Notes under the pieces: generated by a model | The model's input: the letters and a program-made list of their open reading frames with translations, nothing else | What the model was told of the DNA's origin: nothing | Databases searched by the model: none | Translations under genes and position numbers: made by a program | From: Saccostrea echinata | Lineage: Eukaryota | Length of the DNA: 64,000 nucleotides | Assembly (NCBI RefSeq): GCF_033153115.1 | Contig: NW_026889795.1 | Span: 12,338,001-12,402,000, forward strand | Direction of reading: 5' to 3' | In this document: positions 18,751 through 34,606 of the stretch, one piece after another | Layout of the letters: the number at the start of each line of letters is the position of its first letter | Numbering within the stretch: position 1 is the stretch's first letter

Positions 18751-18792
18751 ATGTCCTGGATATTTTTCTCATGGATTATATTCTTAAAATAT
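18751..18792 (+). CDS. TM-STAND-ankyrin receptor, putative exon 1 (MSWIFFSWIIFLKY; signal peptide)
   Basis: accATG context, hydrophobic peptide, gtaagt donor, phase 0 matching the next exon; an N-gap in the intron could hide another exon. Confidence 0.6.
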
Positions 18793-20384
18793 GTAAGTAT
18801 TTTAATAGGGATTTCTTATAAACTGAGGGATAACTATCATCGGAAGTCTACAGTAGGAATTTTTTAACGATCAGGGTAGCTTTACACGATAAAAAAAATC
18901 AATATCGACGACGATTTTACTACAATATGTTATTATGAAGAGTCATTAAAATATTTTTAAACAGGACAACATTAAAATGGAGAAGTGACATATATTATTT
19001 TTGTATTATATTTACGAAAAACAGTAAAAAAAAAAAATGTATTTGCTATGTTTTAACTTTAACCAGATTTAGTTTTTGTGATACTGTTGGATGACCTTAA
19101 AATAAACAAAGAGTGTTTGGGGTTCGATAAGATAGCTACACTATTACACATACACCATCCAAGTAATCGAATTGAATAAAAATGCTTGTAACCTCTCAAA
19201 GTTCTAAATTCTTGGGGGAAATTTAGAATTAACATTTGATTTACCTCAAGGTCATTCTATCAACCAAAATAAAGTACAAAATGTTGAATCCAACAAGATT
19301 GAAGATACCTTGTATCTTCAAGATTGAAAATACCTTGTATCTTCAATTTAATTTTTTTTTAGTTGTCTCCTTCGTTTTAGCCAATTGATCTAAATCAAAT
19401 TCAAGACTATATCAAACATATGGTGTTCGTAATTTTTAACTGATCTTTAAATAAGTATTTAAAAAAAAAAACAAATCAGAAACATTCAAATTGTATTTTA
19501 TCAAAGGTACTAAATGGAACTTCATTTAAGTCTAAAAAAAAAATATTTAAGGATCTGAAAAATAAAAAAAAAAAAAAAATTAATGAAATTTAAAATATTG
19601 CCTGTTTTTTAAATAATACAAAAATTCGGATAAAAAATTCCTTCCCCTACATTTAAATTTGTNNNNNNNNNNNNNNNNNNNNNNNNNNNNNNNNNNNNNN
19701 NNNNNNNNNNNNNNNNNNNNNNNNNNNNNNNNNNNNNNNNNNNNNNNNNNNNNNNNNNNNNNNNNNNNNNNNNNNNNNNNNNNNNNNNNNNNNNNNNNNN
19801 NNNNNNNNNNNNNNNNNNNNNNNNNNNNNNNNNNNNNNNNNNNNNNNNNNNNNNNNNNNNNNNNNNNNNNNNNNNNNNNNNNNNNNNNNNNNNNNNNNNN
19901 NNNNNNNNNNNNNNNNNNNNNNNNNAATTGTAACTTTATCTGAACTCTCATCTCTGTTTTCCTTATTTACAGTGTATTGATTTGACATTGTAATTCCATC
20001 GAGCACCAAAAAATGATTGCTTTAGTCTCCTCAGCTTGGTAACATGGAGGTCATTTATTTTTTATTTATCAATTATTTTTTTTTTAATTTATTTTTGAAA
20101 ATTAATAAGTAGATATGGTAAGTATATGCATGGGCAACATTACTTCACAAAGAAAGTGTTAAATAGACTGAATAGGGATTTTTGGACAAGAAGCACAGAG
20201 TGAACAAAGAGAAAAAGATATGAATTATTAATGATTTATGTTCAGATTATCAAAACAGCATAAAAATGTGTAGTGCTTTTCCAAACTTGCCATTTCTGGT
20301 CTATGTGATACATGCTATAAAATATAATGCAAAATATATTCTGTTTAATGATCAGATACATGTATTTTACTTTAACTTTTATAG

Positions 20385-20583
20385 ATGCCTATAATACAAT
20401 CCAGGGGAACTGTTTTTACAGTAGATAGTTGTCCGGGAAACATTTCCGAGGTTGAAGATGCTTCCCAAAGACTGAACTGTTCTGAAATTGACAAGTTTGA
20501 AAACATATATCATTGTCTACCACTGTCGGACTTGTCTCAGCTTGTGGAATTGTGTTACCAAACCAGCTTTATGATTGAAAAGG
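20385..20583 (+). CDS. Receptor exon 2, Cys-rich ectodomain (MPIIQSRGTVFTVDSCP..LNCS..YHCLP..ELCY..IEK)
   Basis: ttttatag acceptor, g|gtaaca donor, 199 nt open, phase 0 to 1. Confidence 0.82.
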
Positions 20584-31100: not shown

Positions 31101-34100
31101 TACAACTGTTACTGAACAACGGTGCCGACATCAATTTATGTAATAATGATGGATTCAGTCCTCTAAGTATAGCCTGCCAAGTTGGACACGATAGCAATGT
31201 TCAGCTATTACTGAACAACGGTGCCGACATTAATTTATATAGTAATGATGGAGTCAGTCCTCTTAATATAGCTTGTCAAAATGGACATGATCAAACGGTA
31301 CAACTGTTACTGAACAACGGTGCCGACATCAATTTATGTGAAAATGATGGAGTCAGTCCTCTTTATATAGCCTGTGAAAATGGACATGATAGCACGGTAC
31401 AACTGTTACTGAACAACGGTGCCGATATCAATTTACGTGAAAATGATGGAGTCAGTCCTCTTTATATAGCTTGTTATAATGGACATGATAGCACGGCACA
31501 ACTGTTACTGAACAACGGTGCCGATATCAATTTATGTGAAAATGATAGATTCAGTCCTCTTTATATAGCCTGTGAAAATGGACATGATAGCACGGTACAA
31601 CTGTTACTGAACAACGGTGCCAACATCAATTTATGTAGTAATGATGGAGTCAGTCCTCTTTGTATAGCTTGTCAAAATGGAAATGACAGAACCGTACAAC
31701 TGTTACTGAACAACGGTGTCGACATCAATTTATGTAATAATGATGGATTCAGCCCTCTAAGTATAGCCTGCCAAGTCGGACACGATAGCAATGTTCAGCT
31801 ATTACTGAACAACGGTGCCGACATTAATTTATATAGTAATGATGGAGTCAGTCCTTTTAATATAGCCTGCCAATTTGGACATGATCAAACGGTACAACTG
31901 TTACTGAACAACGGTGCCGACATCAATTCATGTGATAATGATGGAGACAGTCCTCTTTATATAGCTTGTCAAAATGGACATGATAGCTCGGTACAACTGT
32001 TACTGAACAACGGTGCCGACATCAATTTATGTGAAAATGATGGAGTCAGTCCTCTTTATATAGCTTGTCAAGTTGGACATGATAAAACTGTTCAACTGTT
32101 ACTGACCAACGGTGCCGACATCAATTTATGTGAAACTGATGGAGTCAATCCTCTTCATATAGCTTGTCAAAATGGACATGATAAAACTGTACAACTGTTA
32201 CTGAACAACGGTGCCGACATCAATTTATGTGAAAATGATGGAGTCAGTCGTCTTTATATAGCCTGTGAAAATGGACATGATAGCACGGTGCAACTGTTAC
32301 TGAACAACGGTGCCGATATCAATTTATGTAGTAATAATGGAGTCAGTCCTCTTTATATAGCTTGTCAAAATGGACATAATAGTACGGTACAACTATTACT
32401 GAACAACGGTGCCGACATCAATTCGTGTGATAATGATGGAGACAGTTCTCTTTATATAGCTTGTGAAAATGGATATGATAGCACGATACAATTGTTACTG
32501 AACAACGGTGCTGACATTAATTTACGTAACAAGAATGGAGTCAGTCCTCTTCATATAGCTTGTCAAAATGGACATGATAAAACTGTACAACTGTTACTGA
32601 ACAACGGTGCCGACATCAATTTATGTGAAAATGATGGAGTCAGTCCTCTTTATATAGCCTGTGAAAATGGACATGATAGCACGGTACAACTGTTACTGAA
32701 CAACGGTGCCGATATCAATTTATGTGAAAATGATGGAGTCAGTCCTCTTTATATAGCTTGTTATAATGGACATGATAGCACGGTACAACTGTTACTGAAC
32801 AACGGTGCCGATATCAATTTATGTGAAAATGATAGATTCAGTCCTCTTTTTATAGCCTGTGAAAATGGACATGATAGCACGGTGCAACTGTTACTGAACA
32901 ACGGTGCCGATATCAATTTATGTAGTAATAATGGAGTCAGTCCTCTTTATATAGCTTGTCAAAATGGACATAATAGTACGGTACAACTATTACTGAACAA
33001 CGGTGCCGACATCAATTCGTGTGATAATGATGGAGACAGTTCTCTTTATATAGCTTGTGAAAATGGATATGATAGCACGATACAATTGTTACTGAACAAC
33101 GGTGCTGACATTAATTTACGTAACAAGAATGGAGTCAGTCCTCTTCATATAGCTTGTCAAAATGGACATGATAAAACTGTACAACTGTTACTGAACAACG
33201 GTGCCGACATCAATTTATGTGAAAATGATGGAGTCAGTCCTCTTTATATAGCCTGTGAAAATGGACATGATAGCACGGTACAACTGTTACTGAACAACGG
33301 TGCCGATATCAATTTATGTGAAAATGATGGAGTCAGTCCTCTTTATATAGCTTGTTATAATGGACATGATAGCACGGTACAACTGTTACTGAACAACGGT
33401 GCCGATATCAATTTATGTGAAAATGATAGATTCAGTCCTCTTTTTATAGCCTGTGAAAATGGACATGATAGCACGGTACAACTGTTACTGAACAACGGTG
33501 CCAACATCAATTTATGTAGTAATGATGGAGTCAGTCCTCTTTGTATAGCTTGTCAAAATGGAAATGACAGAACCGTACAACTGTTACTGAACAACGGTGC
33601 CGACATCAATTTATGTAATAATGATGGATTCAGTCCTCTAAGTATAGCCTGCCAAGTTGGACACGATAGCAATGTTCAGCTATTACTGAACAACGGTGCC
33701 GACATTAATTTATATAGTAATGATGGAGTCAGTCCTCTTAATATAGCTTGTCAAAATGGACATGATCAAACGGTACAACTGTTACTGAACAACGGTGCCG
33801 ACATCAATTTATGTGAAAATGATGGAGTCAGTCCTCTTTATATAGCCTGTGAAAATGGACATGATAGCACGGTACAACTGTTACTGAACAACGGTGCCGA
33901 TATCAATTTACGTGAAAATGATGGAGTCAGTCCTCTTTATATAGCTTGTTATAATGGACATGATAGCACGGCACAACTGTTACTGAACAACGGTGCCGAT
34001 ATCAATTTATGTGAAAATGATAGATTCAGTCCTCTTTATATAGCCTGTGAAAATGGACATGATAGCACGGTACAATTGTTACTGAACAACGGTGCCAACA

Positions 34101-34606
34101 TCAATTTATGTAGTAATGATGGAGTCAGTCCTCTTTGTATAGCTTGTCAAAATGGAAATGACAGAACCGTACAACTGTTACTGAACAACGGTGCCGACAT
34201 CAATTTATGTAATAATGATGGATTCAGTCCTCTAAGTATAGCCTGCCAAGTTGGACACGATAGCAATGTTCAGCTATTACTGAACAACGGTGCCGACATT
34301 AATTTATATAGTAATGATGGAGTCAGTCCTCTTAATATAGCCTGCCAATTTGGACATGATCAAACGGTACAACTGTTACTGAACAACGGTGCCGACATCA
34401 ATTCATGTGATAATGATGGAGACAGTCCTCTTTATATAGCTTGTCAAAATGGACATGATAGCTCGGTACAACTGTTACTGAACAACGGTGCCGACATCAA
34501 TTTATGTAACAAGGATGATGTAAGTCCCCTGTCGATAGCTAAAAAAAATGGACATGACAGTACAGTCAAACTATTAGTTAACAATGTCGCCTTATCAATC
34601 TCATGA
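28116..34606 (+). CDS. Receptor last exon: STAND-type (nSTAND3-like) P-loop NTPase, helical region and ~50 ankyrin repeats
   Basis: 6.5-kb open frame; T-rich tract plus tgtag acceptor at 28111-28115 in phase 1; Walker A GNSGCGKT (28238-28261); Walker B-like ILFVLND; KLLVSCR sensor-like strand; FPLLC (GxP-like position); FQFLHDFI (MHD-like); ankyrin consensus SPLxIACxxGH..VQLLLNNGADIN. Confidence 0.93.
29861..34603 (+). repeat. Coding tandem array: 47 full 99-bp ankyrin units plus a divergent terminal capping unit
   Basis: Exact 33-aa period with no indels; units counted from the translation. Confidence 0.96.

What the first reader, a model, noticed from the sequence alone, without database searches (positions are those of the whole stretch)
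18751..34606. Hidden single-pass membrane receptor coupling a Cys-rich ectodomain to a cytoplasmic STAND NTPase and ~50 ankyrin repeats
Seen: six small exons upstream of the large ORF have canonical splice sites and mutually compatible phases (one junction falls in an N-gap). Joined, they give signal peptide, 10-Cys domain, stalk, 22-aa TM, KRKRSR, linker, P-loop NTPase and ankyrin array (~2,400 aa). Six N-glycosylation sequons lie before the TM (NIS, NCS, NRS, NAT, NIS, NTS), and the basic cluster after it fits type I topology. Established: STAND NTPases (NLRs, Apaf-1, fungal HET-E, bacterial Avs) are mostly soluble effector-NTPase-repeat switches. Inference: here the usual N-terminal effector position holds an extracellular domain. 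The protein could sense a cytosolic ligand through its ankyrins, oligomerise and signal outward, or extracellular binding could cluster the NTPase. I know of no characterised receptor with this layout. Similar uncharacterised bivalve gene models probably exist, so the function is more likely new than the sequence family.
Basis: partly seen in the sequence, partly recalled or inferred. Interest (0 to 1): 0.88.

Follow-up and report, generated by a model that had tools for sequence, protein, structure and literature searches.

The report
Membrane-anchored STAND-ankyrin gene of an oyster
This oyster gene very probably encodes a membrane protein with a small cysteine-rich outer domain and a cytoplasmic NLR-like ATPase switch plus about 47 ankyrin repeats; it belongs to a large oyster family known only from gene predictions, never studied at the bench.

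Summary
Seven + strand exons (18751-34606) have GT/AG sites and matching phases. Only the exon 4 to 5 junction is untestable, because its acceptor lies in the gap 25401-25564, which I did not fill.

- **Organism:** the genome is evidently the Saccostrea echinata RefSeq assembly.
- **Junction support:** RefSeq models of sister copies use the same junctions. One joins the TM exon to the NTPase exon.
- **Relatives:** at least 28 Crassostrea/Magallana models share the whole layout.
- **Prior description:** Kaur et al. 2021 (eLife) described related receptor-like oyster architectures. The scan also noted this family elsewhere in the genome (s1-817739).
- **New here:** an acidic dileucine motif specific to TM-headed members; repeated swapping of ecto-TM and HEPN heads; a confidently modelled ectodomain with no solved-fold match.
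- **Missing:** no RNA evidence could be obtained.

Verdict: interpretation supported; new member of a known, uncharacterised kind.

The parts
18751..18792 (+). Exon 1: start codon and 14 codons of a hydrophobic leader (candidate signal peptide core), GTAAGT donor at 18793
   Evidence: sequence. ATG, open 14-codon frame and donor are conserved at C46:12216163 (84% identity) and C46:12055254 (75%). The RefSeq S. cucullata model P0204 joins an e1-like leader directly to e2-like sequence. SignalP was not available.
19663..19925 (.). Assembly gap inside intron 1, outside the coding model
   Evidence: It lies between the e1 donor (18793) and the e2 acceptor (20384). Not filled.
20385..20583 (+). Exon 2: first part of the 10-Cys ectodomain (4 Cys; sequons NIS, NCS)
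   Evidence: tblastn hits from 25 oyster TM-nSTAND3-ANK models, E 1e-7 to 5e-4. Supplies 4 of the 10 conserved Cys columns. At least 93 similar exons in the same genome. dN/dS 0.26-0.29.
20884..20988 (+). Exon 3: middle of the ectodomain (3 Cys; sequon NRS)
   Evidence: 91% identical in both paralogues. The RefSeq model P0054 uses the same e2|e3|e4 junctions in paralogue L002.
25250..25322 (+). Exon 4: end of the ectodomain (3 Cys), ends in phase 2
25401..25564 (.). Assembly gap that hides the acceptor and first codons of exon 5
   Evidence: Frame continuity e4>e5 is untestable. Not filled and not looked up.
25565..25762 (+). Exon 5, visible part: Ser/Thr/Asn-rich stalk with 3 sequons, TM helix (25657-25719), basic cluster KRKRSR (25720-25737)
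   Evidence: KD 3.37. Homologous exon in both paralogues. Aligns to the TM exon of RefSeq model P0209.
25967..26053 (+). Exon 6: acidic cytoplasmic linker with the EMEALL ([DE]xxxL[LI]) motif at 26002-26019
   Evidence: Motif present in 20 of 28 TM-type homologues against 3.6 expected, and in 18 of 28 against 2 of 17 non-TM heads. The paralogue model P0209 has ETEALL.
28116..29098 (+). Start of exon 7: nSTAND3 NTPase module (NBD-HD-WHD). Walker A GNSGCGKT at 28238-28261; Pfam nSTAND3 match at 28169-28639.
29099..29860 (+). Helical linker and degenerate ankyrin repeats between the NTPase and the regular array
29861..34606 (+). 47 regular 33-aa ankyrin repeats (29861-34513), a short tail, and the stop codon at 34604-34606
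   Evidence: TRF: 99 bp x 47.7 copies, 87% matches, no indels. Only 26 distinct units. Blocks are 100% identical at offsets of 6, 19 and 25 units. The most variable positions include 4 of the 6 DARPin-randomised positions.

Best explanation
This is one intact gene of the oyster Saccostrea echinata. It is not present as a protein in the database ranges searched.

**Encoded protein.** It is a type I membrane protein of about 2,400 residues with these parts:
- a leader peptide;
- an N-glycosylated 10-cysteine ectodomain of about 125 residues, specific to molluscs;
- a stalk, one TM helix and a basic stop-transfer cluster;
- a cytoplasmic linker of about 60 residues carrying an acidic dileucine motif;
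- an nSTAND3 nucleotide-binding oligomerisation module;
- about 47 ankyrin repeats.

**Most likely working (inferred).** It is a membrane-tethered STAND switch of innate immunity.
- The ankyrin array is the cytosolic ligand-binding and autoinhibitory sensor.
- Ligand binding releases the ADP-locked NTPase, which oligomerises.
- Because each subunit is anchored by its N-terminus, oligomerisation clusters the TM helices and ectodomains in the plane of the membrane.
- The dileucine motif suggests adaptor-mediated sorting between the plasma membrane and endo-lysosomal or phagosomal membranes.

**Shown:** exon structure, domain identities, family membership, conservation. **Inferred:** a single transcript at this locus, topology, sorting, direction of signalling, immune role.
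For: **Gene unit**
- Canonical sites and matching phases.
- All junctions are conserved in two tandem paralogues, with e2-e6 followed by the NTPase exon 6.4-7.3 kb further on.
- e1 is conserved in three copies.
- RefSeq models use the same junctions: P0054 for e2|e3|e4; P0209 for the TM exon, the e6-like exon and the NTPase exon; P0204 for e1|e2.
- 28 of 52 homologues carry a TM helix before the NTPase (26 of them scored). In the 24 aligned, a Cys-rich ectodomain precedes it.
- P0027, an uninterrupted 1245-aa ORF on a 4-kb Logan contig, runs from the ectodomain end through TM, NTPase and ANK.
- No HEPN, CARD or other head exon is found in the window.
- Purifying selection acts on e2-e4.

**STAND identity:**

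**Ectodomain:** all 10 conserved Cys are present. The model has pLDDT 93-98.

**Topology:** six sequons before the TM helix and a basic cluster after it.

**Sorting motif:**

**ANK as sensor:** variation is concentrated at canonical binding positions. The ectodomain evolves no faster than the NTPase.

**Modular heads:** TM and HEPN heads interleave on the NTPase tree, with at least 5 changes.
Against: - Expression is therefore unshown.
- The e4>e5 junction lies in a gap.
- In S. cucullata the nearest relative is annotated as two genes: an ecto-only P0204, frame-shifted after e3, and a soluble NTPase-ANK P0210.
- One sister paralogue (L002/L005) is broken.
- The ankyrin copy number rests on blocks that are 100% identical, so it could be an assembly effect.
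- The direction of signalling is not addressed by any data here.
- Some family members carry ecto-TM in addition to HEPN (P0047). The head therefore need not sit in the 'effector' slot.
Confidence: 0.6

Rival explanations
1. Outside-in receptor. The 10-Cys ectodomain binds an extracellular or lumenal ligand, such as a pathogen surface, another cell or an allogeneic or tumour cell. Clustering then drives NTPase oligomerisation, and the ankyrin array serves as a scaffold for downstream partners. This is the reading Kaur et al. 2021 gave for the related Crassostrea proteins.
For: - PMC8195603 section 13 proposes external stimuli for the receptor-like Crassostrea architectures.
- The ectodomain is a well-folded, glycosylated, widely reused module. 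It has at least 93 exons in this genome and 206 representative clusters.
- The same head is fused to several different cytoplasmic NTPases, as expected of a sensing head.
Against: - The ectodomain is under purifying selection similar to the NTPase (dN/dS 0.17-0.48 against 0.27). It shows no hypervariability among the three close paralogues.
- In STAND proteins the C-terminal repeats are normally the sensor (established knowledge). The ankyrin variation here sits at binding positions.
Confidence: 0.3
2. Two neighbouring genes. One is a small ectodomain-TM membrane protein ending in or after exon 6. The other is a separate soluble nSTAND3-ankyrin protein that starts at or near the ATG at 28034 or from unseen 5' exons.
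For: - The long ORF has an in-frame ATG at 28034.
- RefSeq annotates the S. cucullata relatives as two genes on one contig (P0204 and P0210).
- RefSeq annotates paralogue L002 as a 120-aa protein (P0054).
- There are no spliced reads for this locus.
Against: - The codons from 28034 to 28115 read through a T-rich acceptor tract that is conserved as an intron end in the paralogues. Homology to all relatives starts at 28118-28136.
- e6 ends in phase 1 on a conserved GT with no stop.
- RefSeq P0209 joins the TM exon to the NTPase exon in the sister copy.
- The two-gene annotations coincide with a frameshift or a stop in the head.
- At least 28 full-length fused models exist in Crassostrea.
- The dileucine motif is specific to TM-headed proteins.
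Confidence: 0.12
3. A decaying or mis-assembled copy. The gap hides a disabling lesion, and the 47-repeat array is inflated by the assembly, so no functional protein is made.
For: - One of three tandem copies is already broken (TGA in e4, frame break in e7).
- Repeat blocks are 100% identical.
- The protein is absent from the database ranges searched.
Against: - A 2,190-codon frame stays open with no stop.
- All visible exons are intact and all 10 Cys are kept.
- dN/dS is well below 1.
- The NTPase motifs are intact.
Confidence: 0.1

Closest known systems
Oyster RefSeq gene models with ectodomain-TM-nSTAND3-ankyrin layout (for example Magallana gigas P0018 and P0020, Crassostrea angulata P0028 and P0030, C. 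virginica P0038-P0042)
   Same: Same order of parts: leader, 10 conserved Cys, stalk, TM, basic cluster, linker with [DE]xxxL[LI], nSTAND3, ankyrin array.
   Different: - Only 33-43% identical in the NTPase region.
- The window's NTPase is closer (62-66%) to HEPN-headed Saccostrea proteins.
- The window has about twice as many ankyrin repeats as most of them.
- None has been studied experimentally.
Saccostrea echinata LOC133202172 (P0209), sister paralogue 108 kb upstream on the same contig
   Same: 74% identical NTPase, the same TM exon, e6-like exon with ETEALL, and NTPase exon, joined in a RefSeq model. e2-e4-like exons lie upstream of it.
   Different: The RefSeq model starts just before the stalk/TM exon and omits the ectodomain exons. 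It is 927 aa long, with far fewer ankyrin repeats.
Crassostrea virginica receptor-like TRADD-N expansion (Kaur, Burroughs, Iyer, Aravind 2021, eLife, PMC8195603)
   Same: A Cys-rich extracellular domain plus a TM helix, followed by intracellular immune or apoptosis modules that can include STAND NTPases, HEPN and ankyrins. The ectodomain of P0047, which is of this kind, matches window e2 (E 3e-4).
   Different: Those proteins have a DED and an NCOA6-type TRADD-N module after the TM helix. Here only about 60 residues separate the TM helix from the NTPase, and no such exon is found in the window.
HEPN_DZIP3-nSTAND3-ankyrin proteins of Saccostrea (P0001-P0007)
   Same: The closest NTPase-ankyrin modules outside the window's own three-member clade (62-66% identity), forming its sister clade on the tree.
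   Different: They are soluble and carry an N-terminal HEPN (predicted RNase) head in place of the ectodomain-TM head.
Classical STAND switches: MalT, Apaf-1, plant NB-ARC NLRs (NRC2), NOD2
   Different: Those are soluble, with Death-fold, CC, TIR or DNA-binding heads. Their repeats are WD40, LRR or TPR/SUPR. Sequence identity is only 10-16%. Pfam assigns the window to nSTAND3, not to NACHT or NB-ARC.
Toll-like receptors (functional analogy only)
   Same: Type I membrane proteins that place a glycosylated domain outside or in endosomes and an oligomerising signalling domain in the cytosol. Some use cytoplasmic sorting motifs (my own knowledge).
   Different: There is no sequence or fold relationship. 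TLRs sense with the ectodomain and have no NTPase switch or cytosolic repeat array.

Membership tests
STAND NTPase, nSTAND3 family (Pfam PF20720) | Significant match to the family profile above the curated cut-off | tested here: met
   E 1.5e-21, 77.2 bits against a cut-off of 27.2, covering profile positions 1-155 of 155. NACHT, AAA_16 and nSTAND5 score only below their cut-offs.
STAND NTPase, nSTAND3 family (Pfam PF20720) | Walker A, Walker B and sensor-1 Arg conserved | tested here: met
   GNSGCGKT, the ND-P motif and the SCR motif are present. Their columns are invariant or nearly invariant in 42 homologues.
STAND NTPase, nSTAND3 family (Pfam PF20720) | Tripartite NBD, helical domain and winged-helix module | tested here: met
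STAND NTPase, nSTAND3 family (Pfam PF20720) | Nucleotide-dependent oligomerisation | not testable with these tools
   Needs biochemistry or cryo-EM.
Oyster 10-Cys ectodomain-TM head | All conserved cysteines in the family order | tested here: met
   10 conserved Cys columns in 24 homologues. Window e2, e3 and e4 supply 4+3+3 and tile the domain in order.
Oyster 10-Cys ectodomain-TM head | Signal peptide | tested here: inconclusive
   e1 encodes a hydrophobic core that is conserved with its ATG and donor in three copies. Homologues have N-terminal leaders. No signal-peptide predictor was available, and the joined e1+e2 peptide was not built.
Oyster 10-Cys ectodomain-TM head | Single TM helix with positive-inside flank; sequons only on the N-terminal side | tested here: met
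   KD 3.37 over 19 residues, KRKRSR immediately after the helix (its C-flank read RKRSR), and 6 sequons all before the TM helix.
Single transcription unit e1-e7 | Canonical splice sites and compatible phases at all junctions | tested here: inconclusive
   Met for e1/e2, e2/e3, e3/e4, e5/e6 and e6/e7. The e4/e5 acceptor lies in the gap 25401-25564 and was not looked up.
Single transcription unit e1-e7 | The same junctions used in annotated relatives | tested here: met
   P0054 for e2|e3|e4, P0209 for TM|e6|e7, P0204 for e1|e2. At least 28 fused Crassostrea models.
Single transcription unit e1-e7 | Spliced RNA reads across 25762>25967 and 26053>28116 | not testable with these tools
NLR in the strict sense (NACHT + LRR) | NACHT domain and leucine-rich repeats | tested here: not met
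   NACHT scores E 0.026, 14.8 bits against a cut-off of 26.7. The repeats are ankyrin, not LRR.
Crassostrea TRADD-N receptor-like expansion (Kaur et al. 2021) | DED plus an NCOA6-type TRADD-N module after the TM helix | tested here: not met
   Only about 60 residues lie between the TM helix and the NTPase. tblastn of P0047 and P0050 finds no further exon in the window. Pfam finds nothing in e5 or e6 beyond TM-like noise.

The most novel reading that the evidence does not exclude
The family is a new signalling logic for animal innate immunity: a STAND switch that works inside-out. A cytosolic ligand read by the ankyrin array drives oligomerisation. That clusters N-terminally tethered TM helices and a fold-novel glycosylated ectodomain on the plasma or phagosomal membrane. 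The cluster then either perturbs the membrane, as in TM-effector STANDs of bacteria, or displays an alarm signal to haemocytes. The head would be exchangeable with HEPN RNase heads as an alternative effector.
Probability: 0.15. Interest if true: 0.85.

Novelty: new member of a known kind. Interest (0 to 1): 0.5.

Why it matters
Membrane-anchored STAND/NLR-like switches with an extracellular domain have no studied example in animals. Oysters nevertheless keep dozens of them next to soluble HEPN- or CARD-headed versions of the same NTPase-ankyrin engine.

This locus is a clean, apparently intact example, and it has two sister copies for comparison.

The family could show how invertebrates without adaptive immunity couple membrane compartments to NLR-like oligomerisation. 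It gives concrete handles for experiments: the EMEALL sorting motif, the Walker A lysine, and an ectodomain that models confidently and has no solved-fold match.

It also flags an annotation gap: no protein model of this gene turned up in the database ranges searched. For oyster aquaculture, such expanded immune families are candidates for disease-resistance variation.

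Tried and rejected
- **Joined protein.** The spliced protein was never assembled, searched or folded. 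All searches were done exon by exon by reference. No SignalP or DeepTMHMM-type call on the joined protein was therefore made.
- **Gaps.** The N gaps were not filled. I did not read the paralogue letters that correspond to the e5 acceptor. I note only that the e4-to-e5 distance is 124-152 bp in the gap-free copies (coordinates).
- **Alternative heads.** No HEPN_DZIP3, CARD or TRADD-N-type exon is in the window. No exon resembling the soluble N-terminus of P0210 was found.
- **Ectodomain identity.**
  - No Pfam family.
  - The Atlas gave only unnamed mollusc clusters with scores below 0.9.
  - Foldseek against PDB gave a best E of 1.4.
'No known fold' is therefore not established.
- **Bacteroidales SBBP-repeat proteins (P0066)** hit the e2 profile. 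This is a 31% match over 39 residues summed over repeats, and it lacks one Cys. I judged it chance.
- **Database coverage.** A third large protein search to cover the 1040-1190 aa range for an annotated model of this gene was not run, on cost grounds.

Full report
**What is in the sequence**

The + strand between 18751 and 34606 carries one very long open frame (28034-34606, 2,190 codons). Six short upstream segments are bounded by AG and GT. My reading of the boundaries is:

- e1 18751-18792
- e2 20385-20583
- e3 20884-20988
- e4 25250-25322
- e5 from inside the gap to 25762
- e6 25967-26053
- e7 28116-34606

Phases agree at every junction that can be read: 0, 1, 1, then 1 and 1 for e5/e6 and e6/e7.

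The scan program asked that the gaps be tested first.
- Gap 19663-19925 lies wholly in intron 1 and touches no coding letters of the model.
- Gap 25401-25564 hides the acceptor and the first codons of e5. e4 ends in phase 2, and the first full visible codon of e5 starts at 25567.

The continuity and frame of e4>e5 therefore cannot be established.

Every search was done exon by exon by reference, so no signal-peptide or TM predictor was run on a joined protein.

**What the parts are**

*The NTPase.* The first 594 residues of e7 match Pfam nSTAND3 over the whole profile (E 1.5e-21, 77 bits against a cut-off of 27). NACHT and other P-loop families score below their cut-offs.

An AlphaFold model built on 42 homologues has mean pLDDT 88.8. 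Foldseek's best PDB hits are all STAND proteins: NOD2, a STAND-TPR protein, wheat and Arabidopsis resistosomes, Avs3/4, SAMD9, Apaf-1 and NLRC4.

VIA-align places model residues 1-327 on several of them:

|---|---|---|
| MalT | 16.0 | 282 |
| Apaf-1, residues 112-461 | 15.3 | 275 |
| NRC2 | 15.2 | 278 |
| NOD2 | 14.1 | 282 |

This is the NBD-HD-WHD module. Four columns are invariant or nearly so in the family:
- Walker A (GNSGCGKT);
- an ND-P Walker B region;
- an S-C-R motif;
- an H-D pair after the winged-helix hairpin.

From my own knowledge the H-D pair resembles the MHD motif of NB-ARC proteins.

*The ankyrin array.* From about residue 398 the model is already ankyrin-like. From 29861 there are 47 regular 99-bp units without indels.
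- Only 26 units are distinct.
- Blocks are 100% identical at offsets of 6, 19 and 25 units. For example, units 5-11 equal 24-30 and units 13-17 equal 38-42.

The array has therefore grown by very recent higher-order duplication, or the assembly has miscounted it.

The most variable positions are 9, 1, 18, 13, 5, 2, 14 and 4 in DARPin numbering. They include four of the six positions randomised in designed ankyrin binders. This fits a ligand-binding face.

*The upstream exons.* e2 is hit by the N-terminal regions of 25 oyster proteins (E 1e-7 to 5e-4).

In a MAFFT alignment of 24 homologous ectodomains there are ten conserved cysteine columns. e2, e3 and e4 supply 4, 3 and 3 of them and tile the domain in order.

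All six N-x-S/T sequons lie before the TM helix. The helix scores 3.37 on the Kyte-Doolittle scale and is followed at once by a basic cluster. This fits type I topology.

The ectodomain has no Pfam family, and its only neighbours in the ESM Atlas are unnamed mollusc clusters.

A model of a 217-aa homologue (P0074, 50-sequence alignment) is very confident over the domain: pLDDT 93-98, an alpha/beta fold with four main strands and two helices. It finds no PDB match:
- Foldseek's best E is 1.4.

The domain was not searched alone, so I do not claim a new fold.

**Is it one gene?**

The comparative evidence is strong nevertheless.

1. *Organism and annotation.* The genome is evidently the RefSeq assembly of Saccostrea echinata. 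The window's contig is 12,405,715 bases long. XP_061193861.1 of that species sits on a contig of exactly that length and maps at 100% to a paralogue 209 kb upstream.
2. *Tandem paralogues.* Two paralogues on the same contig keep e2, e3, e4, e5 and e6 in order, followed 6.4-7.3 kb later by the NTPase exon. AG and GT are conserved at every junction while the introns diverge.
3. *Exon 1.* Its ATG, its 14-codon frame and its GTAAGT donor are conserved in three copies.
4. *RefSeq models of relatives use these very junctions*.
   - P0054 joins e2|e3|e4.
   - P0204 (S. cucullata) joins an e1-like leader directly to e2.
   - P0209 (S. echinata LOC133202172, 74% identical NTPase) joins the stalk/TM exon, an e6-like exon and the NTPase exon across a 7.3-kb intron.
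5. *Fused models elsewhere.* Of 52 homologues from Saccostrea, Crassostrea and Magallana, 28 have a TM helix before the NTPase-ankyrin part. In the 24 aligned, a Cys-rich ectodomain precedes it, in a single model.
6. *A likely cDNA.* P0027 is a 1,245-aa uninterrupted ORF on a 4-kb Logan contig. It is colinear with a RefSeq model from the end of the ectodomain through TM, NTPase and ankyrins. An uninterrupted ORF across regions that are separate exons here is most simply a cDNA contig. That is an inference, because I could not fetch the contig.
7. *Selection.* e2-e4 are under purifying selection (dN/dS 0.17-0.48), like the NTPase (0.27). The stalk/TM exon is relaxed (0.54-1.18).
8. *No other head.* No HEPN, CARD or other head exon is found anywhere in the window.

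Three points count against.
- The S. cucullata relatives are annotated as two genes. There, however, the ecto part is frame-shifted after e3.
- Paralogue L002/L005 is annotated as a 120-aa protein. It carries an in-frame TGA in e4 and a frame break in the NTPase exon.
- No protein at least 90% identical to this window's NTPase was found among candidates of 327-1040 or 1190-3780 aa. This copy seems unannotated, and its expression is unshown.

I put the single-gene reading at about 0.85.

**Family context**

The genome holds at least 93 e2-like exons and at least 78 nSTAND3 loci. At least seven places pair an e2-like exon with an nSTAND3 exon within 20 kb on the same strand (my comparison of the two lists).

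The e2 profile finds 206 representative clusters in 1.84 billion proteins.

The same head is also fused to other cytoplasmic modules:
- a Roc-like GTPase P-loop (P0057, P0061, Ostrea edulis P0062);
- another P-loop protein (P0063).

On a tree of the NTPase module, TM-headed and HEPN-headed proteins interleave. Well-supported branches force at least five changes of head. The window groups with P0209 and P0210 (support 96), and that group is sister to the HEPN-headed Saccostrea clade (support 100). Heads are therefore exchanged repeatedly on a conserved NTPase-ankyrin engine.

**A new observation**

The cytoplasmic linker carries EMEALL in e6, which matches [DE]xxxL[LI].
- The motif occurs in 20 of 28 TM-headed homologues, against 3.6 expected from shuffled linkers. 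It usually lies 17-29 residues after the TM helix.
- In the equivalent 60-residue window it occurs in 18 of 28 TM-headed proteins but only 2 of 17 non-TM-headed ones.
- The sister paralogue has ETEALL.

[DE]xxxL[LI] is the classical adaptor-protein sorting signal of membrane proteins (established knowledge). This suggests endocytic or endo-lysosomal trafficking.

The homologues are related to one another, so the counts show conservation within a fast-evolving linker rather than independent events.

**How it most likely works**

Shown here are the domain identities, their order, and the polarity of the sequons and the basic cluster. The rest is inferred.

STAND proteins are ADP-locked switches. 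The C-terminal repeats both inhibit and sense, and ligand binding triggers nucleotide exchange and oligomerisation that brings the N-terminal parts together (established for Apaf-1, NLRC4, plant NLRs, MalT and Avs).

Here the ankyrin face is the diversified part, and the ectodomain is no more variable than the NTPase. I therefore favour this sequence:
- the ankyrin array acts as the cytosolic sensor;
- oligomerisation clusters the tethered TM helices and ectodomains;
- this happens on a membrane chosen by the dileucine signal.

The outside-in reading proposed by Kaur et al. for the related Crassostrea proteins remains a serious rival, at about 0.3. Members such as P0047 carry ecto-TM in addition to HEPN. 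That shows the head can be an add-on rather than a replacement effector.

**Comparison with the known, and novelty**

The kind is known in two ways.
- As gene models: many RefSeq entries, all 'uncharacterized' or misnamed 'ankyrin-1-like'.
- In the literature: Kaur, Burroughs, Iyer and Aravind 2021 (PMC8195603). [quoted passage not shown] They call these receptor-like.

The window protein lacks the DED-TRADD-N module, so it is not a member of that particular expansion. It is also not an NLR in the strict sense, having neither NACHT nor LRR.

A search for nSTAND3 in the paper library gave only phage-defence, fungal NLR and unrelated hits. Further searches found no study of this family.

The scan itself noted the family elsewhere in this genome (s1-817739).

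I file the finding as a new member of a known but uncharacterised kind, with interest 0.5. The architecture is real and biologically attractive, and it lacks any characterised example, but it is not a new discovery as an architecture.

Noticed in passing
L002:7372-7440 and L005:4467-4556 (G000:C46:12127500-12147499): The paralogue 209 kb upstream is broken. It has an in-frame TGA in its e4-like exon and a frame break near codon 28-30 of the NTPase exon. RefSeq annotates only a 120-aa product (LOC133202093, P0054).
   Followed up: partly
window 22196-24251: Intron 3 holds an element of about 2.06 kb bounded by terminal inverted repeats (32 nt at 97% plus 54 nt at 89% complementarity). This is probably a TIR DNA transposon or foldback insertion.
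   Followed up: partly
P0057, P0061, P0062 (Saccostrea and Ostrea edulis RefSeq proteins); P0063: The same leader-10-Cys-TM head is fused to a different cytoplasmic P-loop, a Roc-like GTPase motif IIIVGENGVGKT. In P0063 it is fused to yet another NTPase. P0056 has two ectodomains in tandem. The head is a promiscuous module.
   Followed up: partly
window 29861-34513: The ankyrin array contains blocks of 3-7 repeats that are 100% identical at the DNA level, at offsets of 6, 19 and 25 units. This is either very recent higher-order duplication or an assembly effect. Only 26 of the 47 units are distinct.
   Followed up: partly
window 39410-39811, 48019-49239, 50652-50743: Arrays of a 28-bp satellite (CTACACTACTAACACACATGTCGAGTCA) with higher-order periods of 239 and 267 bp. 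They coincide with the strongly negative GC skew at 48-52 kb.
   Followed up: no
P0066, P0208 (Bacteroidales MAG proteins): Bacterial SBBP-repeat proteins hit the e2 profile at E 1e-12 through seven repeats. Each repeat is only 31% identical over 39 residues and lacks one cysteine. Probably chance.
   Followed up: partly
window 28034-28115: The long ORF extends 82 bases upstream of the acceptor through the T-rich tract. It gives a spurious hydrophobic 'MKRGMSCMKV...' start. Similar intron read-through N-termini appear in the Logan-derived ORFs P0012 and P0043.
   Followed up: partly
window 34607-35600: No AATAAA or ATTAAA lies within 1 kb after the stop codon, so the 3' end of the transcript is undefined.
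   Followed up: no
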